From the NCBI GenBank assembly GCA_964247055.1, contig OZ176052.1, positions 8,866,001 to 8,930,000 on the forward strand: 64,000 bases of DNA. Direction: 5' to 3'. The notes beneath the pieces were generated by a model, which worked only from the letters and a program-made list of their open reading frames with translations, did no database searches and was not told where the DNA came from. Below are positions 20,215 to 52,795 of the stretch, one piece after another. The position numbers and the translations under genes were made by a program. Numbering within the stretch: the stretch's first letter is position 1; each line of letters starts with the position of its first letter. The DNA comes from Paragordius varius (Eukaryota > Animalia > Nematomorpha).

Positions 20215-20870
20215 ACTCAAATTTAAAAGCAATCAAACCTTTAAAACTTAGAGGTGATAATGTTCAGCATCATCGAATCATATAGAAAAAGTGTTTTTGA
20301 ATTTATAAGTGTTTTTATACCGTTTCTATTATACTTTTGTCGTAAGGTTTTTGAGATAGTTTTTGGCAGTGACATTTTGGAAAGTGCTTGACAGAACCGA
20401 GTGGATGAAGTTCTCCTATAAAATCGCTAATGTTCGAAAATCGACTAAAAGCTCAAAAACAATTACATTTAAAAATACCATAAAACTCGATTCACCAAAA
20501 TTTTACTATAAATTAATTTAATTAAAATATCGATTTCGGAAAAATATTTTTTGAATGTCAAAATCTAGCACACATTTTAAATTTTTATCCCAATATCTCA
20601 TCATAGGAAAGCGAAATAATTTGGAACTTTTGAAGCCCATATCTAAAAATTAAAATTTTTTAAAAATATTTTTATATTTTTTATACGTATATAATATGTT
20701 TTAGTGACATTTTTTGCAATGTAGCATTTAGATTTCACCAAGAAAATTTTATTCAAAATGTGAGCAAATTTTGCCATTTTTAGATAGGTAACATTTACCA
20801 CAAAAGTGTGAATAACATTAAACCAAACGATTCAAAACCAAAAGCAACATAATAATCCTACATTATCAGA
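20215..20870. mobile_element. Partial (right-half) copy of the foldback family; ends approximate
   Basis: Shares ATTTAAAAGC..., AGAAAAAGTGTTT...GTTTTTATACCGTTTC and the terminal ACCACAAAAGTG...AAACCAAAAGCA with the 49.2-50.0 kb and 18.3-19.1 kb copies. Confidence 0.55.
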
Positions 20871-23178: not shown

Positions 23179-23363
23179 TTGCGCTATATTAAACATTTCA
23201 AAATTAAGCGGGACACAATATTGTAAATTTTCAAAATTGTTACATTTAACATGATTGTTGCTATTATAAAGAAATATATAGGTAGGTATTAATGATTTTA
23301 TTGTTAATTTTACTTTATATATATTCGCCTACAACATAGCGTCGCGCTTGAGATTGTTTTCTC

Positions 23364-24644
23364 ATGGAGCTGTATGATAGAGGAAGGATTTTAAAGCCTG
23401 ATATTATTTTATGTTTACCGGCAGGGATGTTTCCTTGTCACAAACAGGTGTTAATAAACAATTGCTTATCGCTGCCCAAATATTCGTTTGTGGGTGAAAT
23501 CGATGGGGGAAAGATTGAATTACTGGATAATAAAATTTTTGGTTTTATAACGCCATTGATTATGGCTAAGCTGTTAAAATATATGTATACAAAAGCGTTT
23601 GTTGTGGATCATAATTTAGATTCAGTTTTGCTTGCCTGTCATATTTTGGGAATTACCACGTTGGAAAAACATTTAGGCCGTATCTTAGAAACACTAAGCA
23701 TATCAAAAACATCACAAAATATTAAAGCTGACCAATCTATCATGAAAACCTACATAAATTTAACTTATGAGGCGCCCATTTTTTCATCATGTAAAACACA
23801 TGATAACGACAAAATAGTCAGAATATATGGGCCAACAAATGTAAACCATAATTATGCTATGAACGATATGGTAGAGTATTTGAAAGATGACCATGATAAA
23901 TGTATAAGTTTACATTATGCATATTATGGTCAAATACTGCAAAATACGGTAAATATCGCCACGAAAAATACTGTCGACCAAATTTCATCAATCACAATAA
24001 ATTGGAAATTAAAAAAATTCATCTTACAAAAGGCGATCGAAATTTATGGTTTAACATCAACCCTGTATACAGAAGAAAATGCCACAATCTATATTACGAA
24101 TTTCGGTACTCCCGATGTTAAAGCACCCTGGAACTTGTTTGAATTAGAATTTAAACATAAAGCGTCACATTTATATCACTTATTTCACGGGTTTGAAGCC
24201 GTGGTAAAAAATAATACGTCTTCGAATAAAACTATTTCAGATATTGATGCAAACAACATAATGGATTGGAATTTTTGCCAAATTTGTGCTTTCCTGTCTC
24301 GTGATACATTTCGAATCCCTTATAACGGTGATAATAACGATATTCATGATATCCAGAATACCAGTGAATATGAGTATTTTGAAAAAGCCGTAACTTATTT
24401 ACGAATGTCGGAAACAAAAAGTCGAGAACTCGCGTCAAATGTACCCAATAAACAAGTCAATTTAAGATCCATGCTAATCTTATCTTGTATCCGATTCATG
24501 TATATGCAGCCAGCTTTGCAACTAAAGTGTCTGGAGGAATTAAACACTTTTCCCATTACGTCTAAATTGCCGTTGTTTATGGCTTTCATAATGGATGATA
24601 TAAAAAATTATATTGAAATTCCTAAACAAAGATTTACAATGTAA
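23364..24644 (+). CDS. Intronless BTB/POZ-domain protein, 426 aa, with an unrecognised C-terminal region
   Basis: N-terminal BTB pattern DIILCLPAGMFPCHKQVL...ITPLIMAKLLKYMYT...NLDSVLLACHILGITTL. The 1281-nt ORF is far longer than chance in this AT-rich background. Confidence 0.8.
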   Translation: MELYDRGRILKPDIILCLPAGMFPCHKQVLINNCLSLPKYSFVGEIDGGKIELLDNKIFGFITPLIMAKLLKYMYTKAFVVDHNLDSVLLACHILGITTLEKHLGRILETLSISKTSQNIKADQSIMKTYINLTYEAPIFSSCKTHDNDKIVRIYGPTNVNHNYAMNDMVEYLKDDHDKCISLHYAYYGQILQNTVNIATKNTVDQISSITINWKLKKFILQKAIEIYGLTSTLYTEENATIYITNFGTPDVKAPWNLFELEFKHKASHLYHLFHGFEAVVKNNTSSNKTISDIDANNIMDWNFCQICAFLSRDTFRIPYNGDNNDIHDIQNTSEYEYFEKAVTYLRMSETKSRELASNVPNKQVNLRSMLILSCIRFMYMQPALQLKCLEELNTFPITSKLPLFMAFIMDDIKNYIEIPKQRFTM

Positions 24645-25758: not shown

Positions 25759-28700
25759 TTATTCTTTTCTGTCAGTTTCCAACACCTTTCCATTTATTGT
25801 TTCTTTTGGAGTCTCAGTTATCTTTTTGCCATTTATAGCTGCTGTCTTGCCAGCAGTTGTATCAGGTATGGGAGGGGGAATAAAATATTTGGGATATTTG
25901 ACATACCATTCATTGAATAAATCATGTGATAGTTTTTGGTCTCCCCCCTTTTTATCCTTTTTATTATTTGATGTGAGATCATTAGGTGTTGCATTCGTGT
26001 CAATACTGGTAACTTTGTCTCTCAAAGGGCGTTTTCCCTCCAAATTCTTTGGGTTAAAGAAATGCGTCGTAAAATATTCGTAAAGATTAATTAAACAGTA
26101 GGAGTCTAATGCGGCATAATAGATTTGTGCATCACGTAATGGTCTTTGAGACCAATCAGATTGTTGTTCCGTTTTATCTAAACATTTGCCAAAACACCAA
26201 TGTATTAGTTGAGATAATCCTTTGCATGGGCACAAGGGTAGTAGGGATAAAGAGGGATCAATCGCGCCCATTTTATATCTTGAGCGTCTTTTTCCTTTTC
26301 GTACATTGTTTTGTGGAGTCATTGTAGACGTGACTTTATTTGTTCCATTAGTTAATGGCTGCATTGTGGCATCCTGAGTATTTTTTGTCTGTTGAGGTTG
26401 AGGTGTAGGTGTTGGTATTGGCAATTTCGGATCATAATAATATGGTAATAGATTGGCTTGAAAGTGTTGTTTTACCAATATCAAGTCTAAAATGTTTTTC
26501 ATGGATTTGATAGAAACGGTAGTATTAATTGTATCTGAGTAGTTAATGTTATTATGATTATGTAAATCAAGGACATCATCATTTAGATTCATTCGTCCAA
26601 ATTGAGCTTTGATTTTTGGGGAGGCTTCGAGTTTTAAAAACTCTTGTACCATATTTGTGATACGAGTCAAATCTTCCATAATACTAAAACCAAGTTTCAC
26701 AACATTTTTATTACCAAGAACATCCGACATAAACGTCATCCAATGTTGTTTCAATTGTTTAAGTTCTTGAGGTGTATATCCATTATATTGACATAATTCA
26801 ACCATATCGATTAAAAACACTACGCCATGAGTCGATATTTGTAAAAGGGATATATCCGGTAATGTTCCTAGCGGATTGACAGGGACCCATTCACAATCAA
26901 GCCCTATTATGCGGATATTCTAATATAATATATATTAAATTAGTTGCATGCCGAAAACTATACTCTTAACCCTTTAGTTATTAAGGCATTCTATCAATTT
27001 ATAACCGTTACAAAAACATACTTAATTAAATATAGAGGAATAAAAACATAATATTTTTAATTTTTTTCACTATGCATTAAATATCAAACAGGTATAGCTC
27101 AACTTTCAAACCATTTTTCAAAAAACAAATTTAATACAGTAAAAATTGAAATTATACGGAGATAACGTAAAAATATAAGACAAATATTTTTTTCAAAAGA
27201 CCGTTGTGCCTTTTTAAACTTGTTATGTCAAATACAACTTATTGTTTTAAATTTCATAAAAGGAAATAGAGATATATATAAAATCAGGGTTAAAAAAAGT
27301 TTGGTTGTCAATACTTGTCTTTATATTTTTACGTTTTGACTGTAAAATTTAATTATTACTGTAATTATTGTAAATTAAATAGTAATGACGCCGCCTAGAC
27401 CATTCTTCCGATAAATTGATAAAAGAAGTCTTTTGAGCGAAAATGTTATAGTTTATTTTGCTAACATTTATCATATTTTTAAAATTAAGCATTGATGATA
27501 TATGGATAAAAAAATAATTTAACATATTAAATCTAAGTTTTAAGTTTATAGCTATCAAACCTTGTTTAATTTAAAAATTTGACAAATGTTACAAACTCGT
27601 AAATACTGTCATAAATTTTTTCAACCAAACATGGAGCAAAAATATAAATTTAGTTATGAATGTTTTATTGGTGATTGTATAGAGCGTGTTATCTACTTAG
27701 CCATATTTTTTATTATTTAATACATTTTTCATTACATTTGTTTATCATAATCCCCAATCTTACGTAAGGAAAAAAATTACGGCCTTTTTCACAAATTGAC
27801 AGTTTTTTTGTATAAAACATTGTCACTTTATATATTTACACCTTATATATTCAAAACTTAACTGTAAAAAAATAAGCTAATTCACATATTCTTTTGATTC
27901 CAAAAAAAAATAATTATCTTACATTAGATGTAAGGTAATCCATCATAAGTTTAAAGGCAGGGATGTGGTCGACCCATCTTATAGCTGTTTTGGGTAAATG
28001 CATTTCATAATACTGAGTGTGTTTTGGAGTAATTTGCAATCGATTAAACGGTTTATACAAATGAACATTTAATGTTGGTTTTCTATATCTCCTTACCGAA
28101 TGCAAACTTACGTGAGAAGCTCTGTTCATTTTCATATGGTATGTAACCTATATATATATCACAGTATTTTTGTTTACGCAATGAAATTATACATTAATTT
28201 AAAATAAAATTTGAAAATTGCATAAGATTAATACTGGACAGCAAATAAATACGAAAAATTTTATTGGGGATTGGGTTTGCTCGTTCTAATGCTAGCTAAG
28301 ATTTCGTTTCCATTTTTTTTAAATTTACAGACTCATATTTTTTTGATATAATGAATTTTCGGTTGTAAAAATATTTAAGAAAATAGAGTATATTTTCAAA
28401 ATCAAATATACTTTAATTAACAAGATTAAAGACGGTTTCTACATAAACACACTATTTCCCTGTATAAAATATTAATTGTGTTGAAATATAAAAATTATTT
28501 AAAAGTAATGGGCATTTTTTGATCTTTTGAATAGCCTGTCAAATATCTAAATAAAAACATTTAAGTACCGGTTTGTAAAAGATATTAAGAATTATAGTCT
28601 TTGTTTTTAATAAAATTGGGTATGACCGCTGTGTTTTCAAAAACATAGAATAAAAAATTTAAAATATTATGAAAATAATAATCATGATTTTAAAAAAAAA

Positions 28701-30140
28701 GATATTTAAATTTTGACTCGAGTAAAACCAAATTTTGTTAGTTAACGTTTTGTTTAACTCGATTATAATGTGTAGTCAAATTAAAGAATATAATATATAT
28801 TTAAAAAAAAACAACTTACTTGTTTGTCATGATAAAATGATGGGAACAACTTAAGTTTCCAATATAAAGCATAATATGTATCCTTATGCATAGCATTGAT
28901 ATATTGTATGCAATATTCAGGGTAATGGTCAAAGTATAGTTTTACCTATTATAAAAATAAAAATTCTACAAACTATAGATAGCCATATTTTACTTTTTGG
29001 TTAGAATAAATAATTCAATCAATATGTTTGAACGAACTTTTTTGGATGTTACAATGCGATTGAATAATTGTAAATATTGAGCATTAGACTAATCGTTTAT
29101 TTAAGTTTGCAATTATGATATTAGTTTACTTATTATGACTGATAAAGGAATTTATTAGAGGACAGACGAATCTTTATTTTTTGACTGATTAAAAGGCCAG
29201 TACTTTTGAATATATAAAAAAATTAAAATGACAATATTTTATAAATAAAATATCATATTTTTTTAAATTAAATAAATTAGTTGGGGAAGTTTCTTATTTT
29301 ATATTGACCTTCATATAAGTGTTGTGAAAACTTAGGTCAATTACAATGTAAAGCTGATTTGTTCTTTCTCTTTAAAAATTTTATTAACATTATGTTGGAA
29401 GATACAAAAAAGAAATATAAACTTCAATTAACTTAAAATCAAATATTATACATGACTGTATTTTACAAAAAAATATTTGTCAACTTTTTTTTAACAAGAG
29501 GGTTATTCAAAAGTCTGTGGCCAATAACTATAGAGCGAAAAAAGTTCAAGAGCGTGTGTAAATAAAAAACAGCAAAAAGTTTTTTAACTGTTTTATAGAT
29601 CTGATTATTAGATTTTAAGTCGCTTAATCAGATACCGAACACAATTAAACCACTATCATTCCACGGCAACTTGATATAATCAAAAAAAAATGATTTTAAT
29701 TAGAAAATAAAATAACCAGTTCGTAATCGTAATACTGTTGATTGATATTCAAAATATAATAATAGGAATTCATAATTTTTTGCATCCGTAATTTAGGAAA
29801 TATTTCTAATAATTATAAATAAATAAACCTATCGATTGATTAGTAATTTTAATCATATAGAAAATCATTTCTTTAACAAATGATTTATTGAGAAATTTTG
29901 AATAAGGGTCAAAACAGGAAGGTTTGTCATCATAGAACGAATAAAAATGTTGCAAAAGATGTGTATGATGACATTTCTTAGATCTTATAAATTCTTTAAC
30001 TAGACCTTTTTGCTTAGGATCATTAATAAGATTGATAAAAATATCCTAGGTATAAAAAATACACTTACTAAAAAAGCCGTAAAGTCTAAATTCTGATTAC
30101 AAATATCTTTGAAGACAAATTTTTGAATTGTTTCAGTCAT
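25759..30140 (-). CDS. EXD3: EXD3/Mut-7/Nibbler DEDDy 3'-5' exoribonuclease, 7 exons, ~646 aa
   Basis: Exons 30140-30069, 30045-29829, 29805-29717, 29088-29038, 28945-28820, 28147-27923, 26919-25759 (1941 nt, phase-consistent GT-AG; first two introns 23 nt). Exonuclease motifs: IGLDCEWVP, SLLQIS..VFLIDM, VVKLGFSIMEDL, GLSQLIHWCFGKCLDKTEQQSDWSQRPLRDAQIYYAALDSYCL. YYEMHLP precedes the domain, as YYQLPIP does in human EXD3. The last two exons are secure; exons 1-5 rest on weaker similarity plus splice signals. Confidence 0.85.
27137..27342. mobile_element. Small Tc1-like MITE in EXD3 intron 6
   Basis: TA|CAGT...ACTG|TA termini. Internal inverted pair ACGTAAAAATATAAGACAAATATT / AATACTTGTCTTTATATTTTTACGT. 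Confidence 0.5.
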
Positions 30141-30149
30141 TTGATACAC
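30141..30149. promoter_or_regulatory. 9-bp spacer between the divergent EXD3 and PNPT1 start codons (shared control region inferred)
   Basis: Sequence CAT-TTGATACAC-ATG. Each ATG is the first after an upstream in-frame stop (30087-30089 on +, 30170-30168 on -). Confidence 0.55.
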
Positions 30150-33100
30150 ATGCTCACGTTTCGTGGTTTAAATTTCAAATTTTTTAGGAAGCTCAATGTG
30201 GGACGCAAGTTTGATATGCCTTTAATCTGTCAAATAGTTTTGAAATATCTACAGGTAAATTAGCCAAATTAGCAGAAAGTTCAGTTGTTGTTAAGGTACA
30301 TGTTACTAATTAATTTTAGTTGGGTGAAACATCAGTAATGGTGACAGCGATATCGAGCAAAAAGCCAAATCTATCCGCACAATTTTTGCCTTTAACCGTA
30401 CTTTGTTAGTTAATAATTTAGGTTGATTATAGACAAAAAGCAGCCGCTGGCGGACGCATTCCTACAAATTTTTTGAGGCGAGAATTAGGAATATCGGATA
30501 AAGAAATATTAACTAGTCGTATGATTGACCGTTCTATACGGCCAATGTTTTATCCTAATTATTTTTATGATACACAAGTTAATTAACTTAAAACTATTTA
30601 GGTTGTGTGCAATCTTTTAGCTGTTGACGGTATTAATGATCCTGATGTTGCATGTATTAATGGTGGTATGCTTTTAGTACACTTTTAATAATCGGCTATT
30701 GTTTTCTTCCCTATATTTTATCAATCGTTACATACAACTCAACAATAAAATTTTATTTCATTTTAATTGACAGTAAATAGTAGAAATGATTTTTTAAACT
30801 GTGAAAAATTAATATACAGATGTATATTGCAGATAAAACTTTTTTCTATACTCATTTATATAATTTTTTGATAGGAAGGTTTTTTTACTTAATGTTTCTT
30901 TTTTTATTCTTTAAGCGTCCGCAGCCATAAACCTATCAACAATTCCTTGGTTTGGGCCTGTAGGTGCTGTCCGGCTTTCCTTGATTGATGGGGAAATCGT
31001 AGTCAATCCCACCAGGAGGGAACAATCACTCGCCAATCTCAATCTTGTTTTAGCTGGCACGCTAGGGAACAAAGTAGGTTTGTTCCCAAAAAATGCATTT
31101 TTACTACAATTTAAGTCCCACTTTTGTCGCAAATTTAAACATAATATCTATTCAGGGGGATTTTTACAATAGATGTGGCATACTAGGGAACAAAATAGGT
31201 TTGTTTTGAAAATTGCATTTTATAATAACGCAAATTTTCAAATAAGACTCAAACGCATTGCTATTTCTGCGTTAAATATTGCTAGATAGCATACACAGTA
31301 CAGGAAAATACTACTGGCTTTAAAGTTGATGTTTTTGTTTTTTGATATAAGCCTGTTTGTGCCTTGCTGTATTTGTATTTGATAATATCCATTGAAAAAC
31401 TAACACTGAATTTTTACTCTTACTGTACTTTTAAAGAGGAATACATGTGCGCTAATGATGATTTTTCCATTATTATGCCCTATATTATTTGACTTATGTT
31501 TTTTCCCCTTTTTTAGTAAATTTTACTGTAGTATTTATAATATCTTGAAATTTTCCATCATTAAATATAAATATCCAAAATTTGAACCACATAAAAGAGT
31601 TGCGATATATATATTTTTAAATCTAATATTTAACCTTACCTTTGCATATTTTTTCATCATAAATGCAGTCCTTTTTGGCCGTTCCACTAATAAGCGTATT
31701 GGTTCATATAGGAGTCGGCAACCTTTTTGGGACTGCCGACTATTTTAATAATATTTATTAAGCAAACGGCATATTTAAATTATAAATGTTACTTTTATCA
31801 ATTATAAAATTTAAAATAAATTTTTTTAAATAATTAAATCTCATTTCAATACGTTGAATTACTCTAAGTGCAAATAAACTAACCTGTTCATTTCATATAT
31901 TTTCATTAACTCTTTTTTAATACATTTTATAAAAATAATTATTAATTTTGAATTATATTAGACGTTTTGATCGAGTAAATATTCATAATACTGGTCTCTT
32001 TAATATTTGTTCAATTCTGTCATGGATTGAGATTTTTTATATATTTACTTTCATGTCTAATTGGTGACTCAAATTAATATTTTCCAAGTATTTATAATAT
32101 TTACGAATTAGACATAGTATTCTTAATCACCACTAACAAATTCTCGGTTTTCTCCTTCATATATTTTATCAATTCACTCAGAAAACATATATTATAGTGA
32201 TTTTCCATTCTTGGTCTATTGGGAATCCCTATACATAACTGATCATTATCGGTTTTTCTTGATGTTTCTATTATTGCAGATATTTCTTACCGATTCAGAC
32301 GCGATCAATCACTCTTCTAAGTTTAATATGTTTTTCGCTAAAATCTTTTCATTTTTATTGGTTTATATTATATAAATGCACATTCATATAAGAAATAAAA
32401 ATTATTTTCATTATTACCCACATATTTTATATATGCAGTAATGTTGGAGGGTTTTGGTGACGAAATACCCCTACATGACATTATGCGTGCCATAAAAACG
32501 GGACTTAAAGAAATACACGGAATCATAAAATCGATTAATCAATTAACCCAAAAATTTGGGAAAGAGAAAAAAAGTTGCCCTCTTGAATCCTCAAAAATAA
32601 TGCAATCATCAACATCTTTGCCTGTATTGGAACAGGAAGCAGCATTGAACACAAAAAAGAGCGATGTTGAGATTCGGAATGATATAAATTCTTATTTGGT
32701 ATAAAGTTTTTGAAATATGTACTCCATGTGTGATCAAATTAATATATTTTTTATTTTTTTTGCTTTGATTTTTGAAGAAAAAGTTATAAATGCTTCAATA
32801 TAATCTTAATCTTTTTCACTTTTAATGTATAAATTTTATATTACGGCAATAGGTTTCTTGTAAATTTAATTTATATAAGCTTTGATAATGAAATATATAA
32901 ATATATATAATGCGTATATATTGTTAATTATGAACGATTATTATTTATTTAAAAATTTAATTTATTGCCTTGTTTTATTTTTATTTTCCCCCAATTTTTT
33001 TTTATTAAACGTCAATTTTTTCAACAAATCGCAGTTCTTACACTGTGTTATTTTTTTGGAAAAAAATATATATTTTTACTAAATTAATTTTTTTGGTTCA

Positions 33101-41600: not shown

Positions 41601-42316
41601 ATAACTTTTGGTTCGCTTCTTTATTTTCGACGACCTTTTAGATTTAATAGTAGCAGTGCCATCTCTGTTTTGAATTTCATTAGTTAACAAATTTCTAACA
41701 AATTGACACCGCGTGCTTTTAATAGAATTGCCGACAGTTAGTGTGGAAGATGAGAGGTTAAGGGAATGAGTTTGAAATAAAAAATTATTATATTTTTTCC
41801 GAAAATATTTTTGGTTATTTGAAAAAAGATTAGAGAACTGCCAACGACGTAACCGAGATCTCATTATAAAATCGCCAACTTTCCCGGATGGACGATGGTA
41901 TTTTCTATACTTTTTGGGTATGGTTTGTTCATCCGGTAAATCTTAATGAATAAAAAATATATATTTATAAAGAGGTCGTTTAATCAATAAATACTATTGT
42001 ATGACAAAAACTTAAGTAATATTTCTACACATTACTTATTAAATCTGGCTTACATATGATTTGCAAAATATATTTCTATCGCATCTCATGCCGCCCCTTG
42101 TTTAAATAATAAACATATATTGAGACAATAGTTATGGGAATATAAATAAAACATACTTTCCGTTTGTTTTTTCATTACCAAATAGCTTGCATGATAATCT
42201 TGTTTTAAAGAATTCATTTCGTTAATGTATTCAGTTCTAAGTTGTTCCATCTTTTCAAGCAAAAGCGATGAAGCTTCTTCTGCAGTAACAATTAAGCGAT
42301 CCGCCGATAGAGACAT
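38618..42316 (-). CDS. Unidentified protein with an N-terminal coiled-coil-like segment, 3 exons, ~290 aa
   Basis: Exons 42316-42157 (donor GTATGT), 41941-41600 and 38997-38618 join in phase 1/1 into one open frame and link three separate ORF-track fragments. The N-terminus MSLSADRLIVTAEEASSLLLEKMEQLRTEYINEMNSLKQDYHASY looks helical. No family recognised. Confidence 0.6.
39127..41476. mobile_element. 2350-bp CAC-ended element with ~890-bp inverted arms and 3-bp TSD (TCT)
   Basis: The left arm 39127-~40016 is the reverse complement of the right arm ~40575-41476, with a spacer of ~560 bp. Termini are CACAGTGTGCAA / TTGCACACTGTG, with TCT on both flanks (39124-39126, 41477-41479). Confidence 0.88.
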
Positions 42317-42373
42317 TTAAATTCAAATAAAATATTTATTCATGCATTGAGCACATGTTCAAAAATATGTGAT
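42317..42373. promoter_or_regulatory. 57-bp spacer between the divergent orphan gene and SC5D start codons
   Basis: ATG at 42316 (-) is immediately preceded by an in-frame TAA. ATG at 42374 (+) matches the conserved SC5D start MDLVL. Confidence 0.45.
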
Positions 42374-43884
42374 ATGGATTTGGTCCTTAATATTTGTGAT
42401 AACTACTTTTTGACCCCTTATATATATCCACCAAATTTTTTACCTCACAATATATGGAGACAAATTATATCACTAACATTTGTAGTCAATTTGGGCGCAA
42501 TTCTATTATATATATCTACTGCAACTATAAGCTACTTTTTTATTTTTGATAAATCACTGATGAAACATCCATTGTTTCTTAAGGTATATACAGTTTTTAT
42601 TACAGAATCAAGTTTATCTTGAAATATCATATGCTCTTGGGTCAATACCTTTTATGAGCATGCCTACGATCGTAATATTTTTGTTGGAAGTCCGTGGTTA
42701 CAGCAAATTGTATGATGACTTTAGCGAATCTCAATTTGGTAAATTTTAAGTGTGTAATAAATTTTAAGGTTACTTTAGTATAGTGTTTGAAACAGTTACA
42801 TTTATCTTATTTACGGATTGTTTTATATATTGGATACATCGATGGCTCCACATACCTTGGATCTATCGACGCTTTCATAAACAACATCATTTGTATAAAA
42901 TTACGACACCGTTTGCAAGTCATGCATTTCATCCCCTTGATGGATTTTCTCAAAGCTTACCTTATCACATTTACCCATTTTTGTTTCCGCTAAATAAACT
43001 TACATATTTGGGTTTGTTTGTGGCCGTAAACATTTGGACAATTAGTATTCATGATGGGGCTTACGGGGTCCCCACTTGGCTTAAACCGTTTGTTAATGGA
43101 TCGGCTCATCACACTGATCATCACATGTATTACCGCTATAACTATGGGCAATTCTTTACGCTCTGGGATAGGTTAATTTTTATTTCAATCCTTTTTTTGC
43201 ACGTTCGTTCGAAAGAAATAGTTTTTAATATGTAAATATAATTTTTAATTTTTTTCAATAATACAATTGTTTTATAAAAAAACAATATTTTGAGTTCAGT
43301 CATTCCTTGTTGTGGCTTTTTCCAGGGTGACTCATTTTTATTTCTGTTTGGAAAAATTGTCTTTTTTAAACAATTCTATAAACCTGCATAAAAGCACACA
43401 ACTAATTCTATTTTCATTGAAATTAAATGAGTTAATTAACGCTTTTTAAGCCATTTTTATCGATGTTTAAAAAAAATTATGCGGATTATCTTTTGAAAAA
43501 AATATTTTCATTATGCCGACTAATGTTTTAGTGATTATCTCAATTTAATAATATTCTTTTCAAAAAAATTTCGAGGTTTTCTAACTTGTATAAAAAGCGT
43601 TTTCCTATATTTTTTATAACAGAATTGGTGGATCATTTCGGACCCCGACATCATTTTTAGGTAATGGACCAGCTGATTATGTAAAGCGCCAAATGGAAAA
43701 AGCATTATCTTTGGATAAAAATACTGAAAAATTGCAAGATTCAACGCATGAAACAAATAGTATTTTGTTAAATGGACATTCACATCATACGAACGAACAA
43801 AATGGTTCTCTAGGTTTAAGAGCGCGTAAACATGTATTAGAAAACAATGGATTTATTCATTTCAAAACTCGAGTCGAAAATTAA
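42374..43884 (+). CDS. SC5D: Lathosterol oxidase / sterol C5-desaturase, 4 exons
   Basis: Exons 42374-42583, 42606-42738, 42769-43171, 43623-43884 (introns 22, 30, 451 nt). Spliced protein: [19 protein letters not shown]...KHPLFLK|NQVYLEI...[13 protein letters not shown]...FG|YF...YWIHRWLH...HKQHH...[13 protein letters not shown]...HTDHH...[11 protein letters not shown]|IGGSF. All three His boxes are intact. Confidence 0.95.

Positions 43885-47083: not shown

Positions 47084-52795
<5,712 letters not shown>

What the first reader, a model, noticed from the sequence alone, without database searches (positions are those of the whole stretch)
30138..30152. EXD3 and PNPT1 start codons are head-to-head and only 9 bp apart
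Seen: CAT(30138-30140)-TTGATACAC-ATG(30150-30152). Each ATG is the first in its frame after a stop that lies inside the other gene's coding sequence. Inference: there is no room for a promoter or two non-overlapping 5' UTRs, so each gene must initiate within the other's body, giving sense-antisense overlap, or use nearly leaderless mRNAs. Both products are 3'-5' exoribonucleases (small-RNA trimming versus mitochondrial RNA decay), so the arrangement could couple or mutually exclude their expression. The antisense of the PNPT1 start also creates a 4-codon uORF (ATG TGT ATC AAA TGA, 30151-30137) whose stop overlaps the EXD3 ATG.
Basis: partly seen in the sequence, partly recalled or inferred. 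Interest (0 to 1): 0.8.

Follow-up and report, generated by a model that had tools for sequence, protein, structure and literature searches.

The report
Two diverging genes starting 9 bases apart
In this very AT-rich, horsehair-worm-like genome, the mitochondrial RNA-degrading enzyme gene PNPT1 and an opposite-strand reading frame that is probably the start of the small-RNA trimmer EXD3/mut-7 begin only 9 bases apart; this genome packs many diverging genes start-to-start, and no RNA data could be had to show where either message begins.

Summary
The sequence is as described. CAT(30138-30140)-TTGATACAC-ATG(30150-30152) is there, each ATG follows an in-frame TAA inside the other reading frame, and the 4-codon antisense uORF exists. 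The bare motif occurs at chance frequency, so everything rests on the gene models.

PNPT1 is certain. Its exon 2 has only one possible acceptor. The simplest first exon is ATG 30150 plus a 29-nt intron, which gives a 20-residue basic, acid-free presequence.

The EXD3/mut-7 exonuclease and linker exons are certain, but they lie 2-4 kb away. The three exons claimed to start at 30140 have no detectable homology and an unusually low G+C. However, a 132-codon frame reached through two 23-nt introns is rare by chance (0/1466 real non-coding ATGs; 11/20000 simulated).

So this is probably (about 0.5) a real start-to-start divergent pair. It would have either very short leaders or 5'-overlapping transcripts, and promoter elements inside the partner's first exon or tiny introns.

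It is not special to these two RNases. A second pair in this window has a 57-bp spacer, and the scan has already noted many such pairs elsewhere in this genome. The RNA-run finder was closed, so transcription starts remain untested.

The parts
30150..30208 (+). PNPT1 exon 1. It holds ATG 30150-30152 and encodes a 20-residue N-terminal peptide with 5 K/R and no D/E.
   Evidence: Searches show the frame joins exon 2. One search gives the composition. The upstream in-frame stop is TAA 30087-30089.
30209..30237 (+). PNPT1 intron 1, 29 nt (GTTTGA...AATAG).
   Evidence: AG 30236-30237 is the only acceptor between the frame-2 stop (30212-30214) and the conserved EISTGK codons. Searches give the sequence.
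30238..30665 (+). PNPT1 exons 2-5 (30238-30295, 30320-30397, 30422-30577, 30602-30665), separated by three 24-nt introns. Intron 5 follows at 30666-30914 (249 nt).
   Evidence: Searches show a continuous frame; exon 4 matches human PNPT1 at E 3.5e-23. RNase_PH and RNase_PH_C.
30141..30149 (.). The 9-bp spacer TTGATACAC between the two start codons.
30069..30140 (-). Putative exon 1 of the minus-strand gene (ATG 30140-30138, 24 codons).
   Evidence: The upstream in-frame stop is TAA 30170-30168. No homology was found.
30046..30068 (-). Putative 23-nt intron (GTAAGT...CCTAG). Its + strand reads GGTATAAAAAAT, a TATA-like element 90-100 nt upstream of the PNPT1 ATG.
   Evidence: The motif is not significantly enriched, so it is only a lead.
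29829..30045 (-). Putative exon 2 (72 codons + 1 nt).
   Evidence: Pfam, the word search and the ortholog profile were all blank. G+C is 0.245.
29806..29828 (-). Putative 23-nt intron (GTTTAT...ATTAG).
29717..29805 (-). Putative exon 3. If it is unspliced, the frame stops at TAA 29698-29696, giving a 132-codon ORF.
   Evidence: For the ORF-length statistic.
27917..28147 (-). EXD3/mut-7 linker exon (YYEMHLPKTAIRWVD...). It matches positions 340-376 of a profile built from the N-terminal arms of 81 orthologs.
   Evidence: E 1.8e-5 against 3558 frame segments. One search gives tblastn hits from many orthologs.
25762..26919 (-). EXD3/mut-7 DEDDy 3'-5' exonuclease exon. The GLDCEW, IMEDL and YYAALD motifs are intact.
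   Evidence: PF01612, 2.5e-17; the top relatives are named 'exonuclease mut-7 homolog'. locates the motifs.
30137..30151 (-). Four-codon uORF ATG TGT ATC AAA TGA on the minus strand. It matters only if the minus-strand message starts upstream of 30151.
30131..30138 (+). TTTCAGTC: a 3'-splice-site-like or initiator-like sequence 13-19 nt upstream of the PNPT1 ATG.
   Evidence: This is a reading of the sequence only, not a tested function.
42314..42376 (.). Second tight divergent pair in the window. A minus-strand gene has its ATG at 42316-42314, SC5D has its ATG at 42374-42376, and the spacer is 57 bp.
   Evidence: One search finds FA_hydroxylase in the downstream SC5D exon.

Best explanation
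This is an ultra-compact divergent gene pair.

- **Plus strand.** PNPT1 starts at ATG 30150.
- **Minus strand.** A three-exon reading frame starts at ATG 30140. It is most likely the fast-evolving N-terminal arm of the EXD3/mut-7 gene, whose linker and exonuclease exons lie 2-4 kb further on.
- **Shared promoter zone.** Both genes are probably driven from one promoter zone of about 800 bp (29806-30601), which is marked by six introns of only 23-29 nt.
- **Where the promoters sit.** The spacer is 9 bp, so each gene's core promoter must lie in the partner's first exon or tiny introns.
- **What the messages look like.** They either have leaders of only a few bases or overlap antisense by some tens of bases at their 5' ends.
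- **The mix I think most likely.** The minus-strand gene has a very short leader, because an out-of-frame ATG sits 11 nt upstream of its start. PNPT1 may have a somewhat longer leader, because its + strand is free of ATG for 179 nt upstream.
- **Scope.** The arrangement is a general habit of this genome, not a device that links the two RNases.

**Shown:** the sequence, the identity and 5' exon structure of PNPT1, the identity of the distal EXD3 exons, and the rarity of the minus-strand open frame.

**Inferred:** that the minus frame is translated and belongs to EXD3, and everything about transcription starts.
For: - **Sequence and stops:**
- **PNPT1:**
  - Exon 4 is near-identical to human PNPT1, and the domains are found.
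  - Exon 2 has a unique acceptor, and the 29-nt intron joins it to ATG 30150.
  - The N-terminal peptide has 5 basic and 0 acidic residues in 20, as expected for a mitochondrial presequence.
  - The next in-frame Met would delete conserved strands.
- **Minus frame:**
  - It reaches 132 codons through two canonical 23-nt GT-AG introns.
  - None of 1466 ATGs in non-coding parts of the window reaches that length (99.9th percentile 119).
  - Only 11 of 20000 ATGs in simulated AT-rich DNA do.
  - The region is unique in the window, so it is not a repeat.
- **Same orientation as EXD3:** the frame lies upstream of confirmed EXD3 exons, and no other gene was recognised in between. Orthologs carry a 370-550-residue N-terminal arm that must be encoded somewhere in these 3.2 kb.
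- **Tiny introns on both sides of the point** fit the promoter-proximal micro-intron zone that earlier notes describe for this genome.
- **A second pair with a 57-bp spacer** has upstream ATGs at -7, -19 and -31 on one side and at -26, -30 and -37 on the other. This argues for very short leaders.
Against: - There is no RNA evidence at all.
- The minus exons 1-3 have no homology:
  - Pfam was blank.
  - The word search was blank.
  - The ortholog N-arm profile gave 3.0 bits, beaten by 9 of 300 shuffles.
  - The score did not rise when candidate exons were chained.
- Their G+C (0.22-0.25) is below that of every confirmed exon in the window (0.28-0.41).
- Their codon-usage score is no better than that of non-coding frames.
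- PNPT1 could use another first exon: ATG 29452 with a roughly 700-nt intron, which also gives a basic peptide, or ATG 29947.
- No promoter motif is shared by the two tight pairs beyond chance.
Confidence: 0.5

Rival explanations
1. The minus-strand frame is real but is a separate small gene of about 132 codons in three exons, not the start of EXD3. EXD3 then begins somewhere between 29700 and 28150. The start-to-start pair with a 9-bp spacer still exists, but one partner is misnamed.
For: - Without further splicing, the frame ends at TAA 29698-29696, within an ATTAAA sequence.
- No homology links exons 1-3 to the EXD3 N-terminal arm.
- With a third tiny intron the frame does not extend further.
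Against: - No separate EXD3 start was found between 29700 and 28150.
- Orthologs need about 300 more N-terminal residues than the confirmed exons supply.
- The N-terminal arm is the least conserved part of the family, so a blank is expected.
- No family was found for a stand-alone product either.
Confidence: 0.17
2. The minus-strand frame is a chance open frame. Region 29700-30149 is then ordinary non-coding promoter and 5'-flank DNA of PNPT1, EXD3 starts further away, and there is no 9-bp pair.
For: - G+C of 0.22-0.25 is typical of non-coding DNA here and lies below all confirmed exons.
- The codon-usage score is neutral.
- No homology was found by any method.
- The bare CAT-N9-ATG motif is at chance level.
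Against: - The open-frame statistic is about 5e-4 per ATG. That is still about 0.005 after allowing for roughly nine candidate ATGs within 500 bp.
- The frame is held open by two canonical introns of exactly the size class confirmed next door in PNPT1.
- Earlier notes report start-to-start pairs of well-conserved genes elsewhere in this genome.
Confidence: 0.13
3. PNPT1 transcription starts well upstream, inside or beyond the minus-strand exons. One route is a non-coding first exon spliced to the TTTCAG acceptor at 30136. Another is a different coding first exon (ATG 29452 or 29947) spliced to 30238. The two genes would then overlap head-to-head by hundreds of bases, as known 5'-overlapping divergent pairs do.
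For: - TTGTTTCAG|T lies 13 nt upstream of the ATG, and GTAAAG at 30079 would make a 58-nt intron.
- The alternative first exons keep the frame, and one of them also gives a basic peptide.
- The + strand is free of ATG for 179 nt upstream of 30150, where about 3 are expected.
- A TATAAAAAA sequence lies at 30051-30059.
Against: - The alternative donors are weak (for example AAAAAA|GTTCAA).
- The 29-nt intron fits the run of 24-nt introns that follows.
- TATA-like and acceptor-like strings are common in DNA with 27% G+C (8 found against 5.6 expected).
Confidence: 0.15
4. The messages are trans-spliced to a spliced leader just upstream of the ATGs, as in nematodes. The real promoters would then lie far away, and the short spacer would say nothing about initiation.
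For: The acceptor-like TTTCAG lies 13 nt before the PNPT1 ATG. Nematodes, a neighbouring phylum, trans-splice most messages (general knowledge).
Against: - The other three start codons of the two tight pairs have no good acceptor nearby. The minus ATG 42316 has no AG at all in its 57-nt spacer.
- No SL RNA or any other Rfam family was found in the window.
- The paper library holds no report of trans-splicing in nematomorphs.
Confidence: 0.05

Closest known systems
Divergently paired genes with a shared (bidirectional) promoter, as catalogued in Drosophila and vertebrates (PMC2670823; PMC2688522)
   Same: Two unrelated housekeeping-type genes lie head-to-head on opposite strands and presumably share one nucleosome-free promoter region.
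   Different: In Drosophila most pairs have 200-400 bp between their transcription starts, and only 5.2% overlap at the 5' ends (PMC2670823). Here the start codons themselves are 9 bp apart, so the whole promoter must sit inside coding exons or tiny introns. The transcription starts are unknown here.
Head-to-head gene pairs whose transcripts overlap at the 5' ends (114 of 2199 Drosophila pairs; more frequent in vertebrates; PMC2670823)
   Same: If leaders are of normal length, each message would start inside the other gene and give a short sense-antisense overlap.
   Different: Known overlaps mostly involve untranslated first exons. Here the overlap would run over the partner's coding sequence from the first codon. 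This could not be tested.
[quoted passage not shown]
   Same: These are animal messages translated accurately from leaders with a median length of 12 nt. They are enriched among RNA-metabolism and mitochondrial genes, and the element acts in both transcription and translation. That is the kind of mechanism a 9-bp spacer would need.
   Different: The TISU core (AAGATGG, with G at +4 and a purine at -3) is not present. The contexts here are ACACATGC and TCAAATGA, both with C at -3.
Other start-to-start pairs noted by this scan in the same genome (2 or 17 bp, 16 bp, 23-46 bp, 25 bp, 27-39 bp, 55 bp)
   Same: They show the same architecture in the same genome, often flanked by 20-30-nt introns. 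None has RNA evidence.
   Different: Those pairs involve other genes. In this one, one partner's first exons lack homology support.
Compact protist and fungal genomes with near-leaderless or overlapping messages (Giardia, microsporidia; my own knowledge, not checked here)
   Same: They have very short or absent leaders, and promoters reach into neighbouring genes.
   Different: Those genomes are compact throughout. This window has kb-long introns and long gene-poor stretches, so the compaction is local to gene starts.

Membership tests
PNPT1 (mitochondrial polynucleotide phosphorylase) | Two RNase PH-type domains, with close sequence identity to animal PNPT1 | tested here: met
   exon 4 matches human PNPT1 chains at E 3.5e-23. 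RNase_PH and RNase_PH_C are found in separate exons; a later exon finds PNPase fragments.
PNPT1 (mitochondrial polynucleotide phosphorylase) | N-terminal mitochondrial presequence ahead of the first conserved strand | tested here: inconclusive
   The 20-residue peptide has 5 K/R and no D/E, but its helical amphipathicity is no better than that of shuffles. No targeting predictor was available.
EXD3 / mut-7 / Nibbler 3'-5' exonuclease | DEDDy exonuclease domain (PF01612) with DxE, D and Yx3D motifs | tested here: met
   (2.5e-17). locates GLDCEW, IMEDL and YYAALD; the best relatives are annotated 'exonuclease mut-7 homolog'.
EXD3 / mut-7 / Nibbler 3'-5' exonuclease | Long helical N-terminal arm (370-550 residues in 81 orthologs) ahead of the exonuclease domain | tested here: inconclusive
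   Only the last roughly 40 positions of the arm are recognised, in exon 28147-27917 (E 1.8e-5). Exons 1-3 at 30140-29717 score at noise level.
EXD3 / mut-7 / Nibbler 3'-5' exonuclease | C-terminal Mut7-C domain (present in vertebrate EXD3 and C. elegans MUT-7, absent from fly Nibbler; my own knowledge) | not tested
   The exonuclease exon runs into a stop at 25759-25761, and the tblastn hits downstream were only noise. No dedicated search was made.
Bidirectional-promoter (divergent) gene pair | Two genes on opposite strands, 5' ends facing | tested here: met
   This holds for PNPT1 with either reading of the minus frame, provided that frame is coding.
Bidirectional-promoter (divergent) gene pair | Transcription start sites less than 1 kb apart (definition in PMC2670823) | not testable with these tools
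TISU-type short-leader mRNAs | TISU sequence around the ATG (AAGATGG core, purine at -3, G at +4) | tested here: not met
   The contexts are ACACATGC (PNPT1) and TCAAATGA (minus gene). The consensus is from PMC2518114.
TISU-type short-leader mRNAs | Leader of about 12 nt or less | not testable with these tools
   No RNA data.
SL trans-spliced messages | A 3' splice acceptor shortly upstream of the ATG on most genes, and SL RNA genes in the genome | tested here: inconclusive
   Only PNPT1 has a good acceptor (TTTCAG at -15). The other three starts do not. There are no Rfam hits in the window, but a 64-kb window cannot exclude SL genes elsewhere.

The most novel reading that the evidence does not exclude
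In this large, transposon-rich animal genome, divergent housekeeping genes would be built start-to-start as a rule. Each gene's core promoter would be embedded in the partner's first coding exon or in its 22-30-nt introns. The messages would be nearly leaderless, or would overlap by a few tens of bases. The promoter-proximal zone of tiny introns would be the footprint of one shared nucleosome-free region in which all non-essential DNA has been squeezed out. This would be a mode of promoter organisation and translation initiation not described for animals.
Probability: 0.3. Interest if true: 0.75.

Novelty: new variant of a known kind. Interest (0 to 1): 0.45.

Why it matters
If both start codons are real, Pol II promoters in this animal must work from inside protein-coding sequence. 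Ribosomes must then start on leaders of a few bases, or tolerate 5' antisense overlap and upstream ATGs.

That would challenge the usual picture for animals, in which a 100-200-bp promoter gap separates diverging genes and leaders are longer than about 20 nt.

Together with the many similar pairs the scan noted in this genome, it gives a concrete and cheap test case. One RACE or CAGE experiment on any horsehair-worm RNA would decide between leaderless and overlapping messages.

If the minus frame is not translated, the locus is an ordinary promoter and the finding collapses.

Tried and rejected
2. **Related worms.**
   - Word searches with the exonuclease exon and with putative exon 2 were blank.
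   - A PNPT1 exon found only distant fragments, at 54% identity or less.
   - The exhaustive search found mut-7 homologues of arthropods and vertebrates but no close relative.
   - Exact look-ups of the exonuclease ORF found no contig.
   - Conservation of the spacing therefore could not be tested.
3. **Homology of exons 1-3 to the EXD3 N-terminal arm.** All of these were at noise level or uninformative:
   - tblastn of 150 relatives;
   - a profile of 81 N-terminal arms against all 3558 frame segments of the window;
   - that profile against the joined exons with shuffles and against chained candidate exons;
   - Pfam;
   - the PDB, tried with PNPT1 exon 2 only (blank);
   - the ESM Atlas (RecQ-Zn hits with a low recognition value, rejected as chance).
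4. **Codon-usage log-odds** did not separate weakly conserved real exons from non-coding frames, so it was dropped.
5. **Promoter motifs.**
   - GGTATAA-type boxes occur 8 times against 5.6 expected, and two of the copies belong to one repeat.
   - The 7-8-mers shared between the four promoter sides are at the chance number.
   - Inverted repeats around the spacer are A/T runs.
   - All were rejected as evidence.
6. **Trans-splicing.** There is no general acceptor pattern, no Rfam hit and no literature.
7. **Spliced models.** The joined translations were never sent to any search tool. Exons were searched one by one by reference. Joined translations were built only inside local scripts, from window coordinates, to check frames and to score against a locally built profile.


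Full report
**What is in the sequence**

The window has 27% G+C, uses the standard code, and mixes tiny introns with kb-long ones.

At the given coordinates the + strand reads CAT(30138-30140) TTGATACAC ATG(30150-30152).
- The + ATG is the first in its frame after TAA 30087-30089.
- The minus ATG is the first in its frame after TAA 30170-30168.
- The minus strand carries the small uORF ATGTGTATCAAATGA at 30151-30137.

The literal observation is therefore correct. By itself it means little: CAT-N9-ATG occurs 27 times in the window against 23.8 expected.

**Which organism**

Earlier notes of this scan call the genome a probable horsehair worm. The published Gordionus montsenyensis assembly has 26.93% G+C (10.1101/2023.06.26.546503). 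That fits the window but proves nothing. I could not identify the species.

**PNPT1 side**

The exons 30238-30295, 30320-30397, 30422-30577 and 30602-30665 are separated by three 24-nt introns. They translate into a continuous N-terminal PNPase core.
- Exon 4 aligns over all 52 residues with human PNPT1 chains at E 3.5e-23.
- Other exons hit RNase_PH and RNase_PH_C.

The frame that encodes the conserved [11 protein letters not shown] strand is closed by TGA 30212-30214. It has a single AG (30236-30237) before the conserved codons, so exon 2 must start at 30238 and needs an upstream exon with the ATG.

Within 2 kb, the in-frame first exons that contain an ATG are as follows:
- ATG 30150 with the donor at 30209, a 29-nt intron.
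- ATG 30150 with the donor at 30158.
- ATG 29947.
- ATG 29452.
- A few others that give peptides of only 4-19 residues ahead of exon 2.

The 29-nt solution matches the size class of the next three introns. It yields a 20-residue peptide with five basic and no acidic residues, as expected for a mitochondrial enzyme. I put about 0.75-0.8 on ATG 30150 being the PNPT1 start.

Sequence alone cannot exclude a first exon at 29452, which also gives a basic peptide. Nor can it exclude a non-coding leader exon spliced to the TTTCAG at 30131-30136.

**EXD3 side**

The 386-codon exon 25762-26919(-) carries a DEDDy 3'-5' exonuclease domain (PF01612, 2.5e-17) with intact motifs.

An exhaustive search of 1.8 billion representatives gave 199 hits below 1e-10. 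The named top hits are 'exonuclease mut-7 homolog' of insects, a horseshoe crab and a gecko.

Eighty-one of the relatives have a 330-560-residue arm ahead of the exonuclease domain. A profile of these arms recognises exon 28147-27917(-) at its last 40 positions (E 1.8e-5 among 3558 frame segments). Many single orthologs hit that exon too. EXD3 therefore certainly extends to about 28050.

They show no homology by any route:
- Pfam was blank.
- The word search was blank.
- The arm profile gave 3.0 bits, and 9 of 300 shuffles scored higher.
- Chaining candidate exons gave no gain.
- The Atlas look-alikes were rejected as chance.

Their G+C (0.22-0.25) is below that of all confirmed exons (0.28-0.41). 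Codon usage is uninformative.

The open frame itself speaks for them. Starting at ATG 30140 and allowing at most two introns of 20-32 nt, the frame reaches 132 codons.
- None of 1466 ATGs in non-coding parts of the window reaches that length.
- Only 11 of 20000 ATGs in Markov-simulated AT-rich DNA do.
- Allowing for roughly nine candidate ATGs nearby, this is still about 0.005.

The stretch is not a repeat.

I conclude that the frame is probably coding (about 0.85) and probably belongs to EXD3 (about 0.65-0.7). The alternatives are a separate small gene, or least likely a chance frame.

**Is the pairing special to two RNases?**

No.
- The enzymes have unrelated folds.
- In Diaphorina citri, the gene facing the mut-7 homologue is a spectrin/EF-hand gene about 3 kb away.
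- In this same window, a minus-strand gene (ATG 42316) and SC5D (ATG 42374) face each other across 57 bp.
- The scan's earlier notes list pairs with 2 or 17, 16, 23-46, 25, 27-39 and 55 bp between start codons on other pieces of this genome. All lack RNA evidence. These are unchecked notes, used here only as context.

The scan has thus found this architecture before on other DNA of this genome.

**How it may work**

With both starts accepted, the promoter of each gene has to lie within the partner's first exon and tiny introns.

Two extreme models are possible:
- Leaders of a few bases, with back-to-back starts within 30141-30149.
- Face-to-face starts, with antisense overlap.

Indirect hints:
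- The minus gene has an out-of-frame ATG 11 nt upstream.
- In the second pair, upstream ATGs sit at -7, -19 and -31 on one side and at -26, -30 and -37 on the other.
- If ribosomes scan from the cap, those leaders must be very short.
- Upstream of PNPT1, however, the + strand is free of ATG for 179 nt (about 3 expected). A TATAAAAAA also lies at 30051-30059, inside the partner's 23-nt intron. A PNPT1 leader of about 70 nt that overlaps the partner's exon 1 is therefore conceivable.

None of these hints is statistically strong. The TATA-like boxes, inverted A/T runs and shared k-mers are all at chance level.

Animal messages with leaders of about 12 nt exist (TISU; PMC2518114), but the TISU sequence is absent here. 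In Drosophila, 5.2% of divergent pairs overlap at the 5' ends, and most have 200-400 bp between transcription starts (PMC2670823). A 9-bp distance between start codons is therefore an extreme variant of a known arrangement.

Trans-splicing is unlikely as a general explanation.

**Limits**

- No close relative's locus could be fetched.
- The joined spliced models were not sent to any search tool. Exons were searched singly by reference, and the joined frames were used only in local scripts.

**Verdict**

- PNPT1 is secure.
- The EXD3 first exons are plausible but unproven.
- The mechanistic inference is logically sound but untested.
- The functional-coupling idea is unsupported.
- This is one more, rather extreme, example of a genome-wide start-to-start gene packing that deserves one decisive 5'-end mapping experiment.

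Noticed in passing
window 42314-42376: A second tight head-to-head pair. A minus-strand gene (first exon 42316-42089; the exon 39028-38621 further down the same strand carries zf-C3Hc3H) and SC5D (ATG 42374) have 57 bp between their start codons. Several out-of-frame ATGs lie in the spacer.
   Followed up: partly
window 31055-31101 and 31176-31221: A 47-nt direct duplication (83% identity) of the end of a PNPT1 exon and the start of the following intron ([12 protein letters not shown] versus [10 protein letters not shown]). It could be a relic or an alternative exon end.
   Followed up: no
window 20240-20330 and 49530-49620 (minus strand): Two copies of a repeated element share GGTATAAAAA and about 80 nt of similar flank, probably a transposon fragment. 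They inflate the count of that TATA-like 10-mer (5 copies in the window).
   Followed up: no
window 25759-25761: The EXD3/mut-7 exonuclease exon runs straight into a stop, and no Mut7-C-like exon was seen before the BTB gene at 23352-24641(+). The worm protein may lack the Mut7-C domain, as fly Nibbler does.
   Followed up: no
window 29452-29627: Open frames lie on both strands of the same stretch. The + frame (29452-29565) could serve as an alternative basic first exon of PNPT1. The - frame (29627-29466) could be an EXD3 N-arm exon. Neither has homology support.
   Followed up: partly
window 26350-26480 (minus strand, inside the exonuclease exon): A low-complexity P/T/Q/N-rich insertion of about 100 residues splits the exonuclease domain between its ExoII and ExoIII motifs. 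This probably explains why the word-based protein search found nothing.
   Followed up: no
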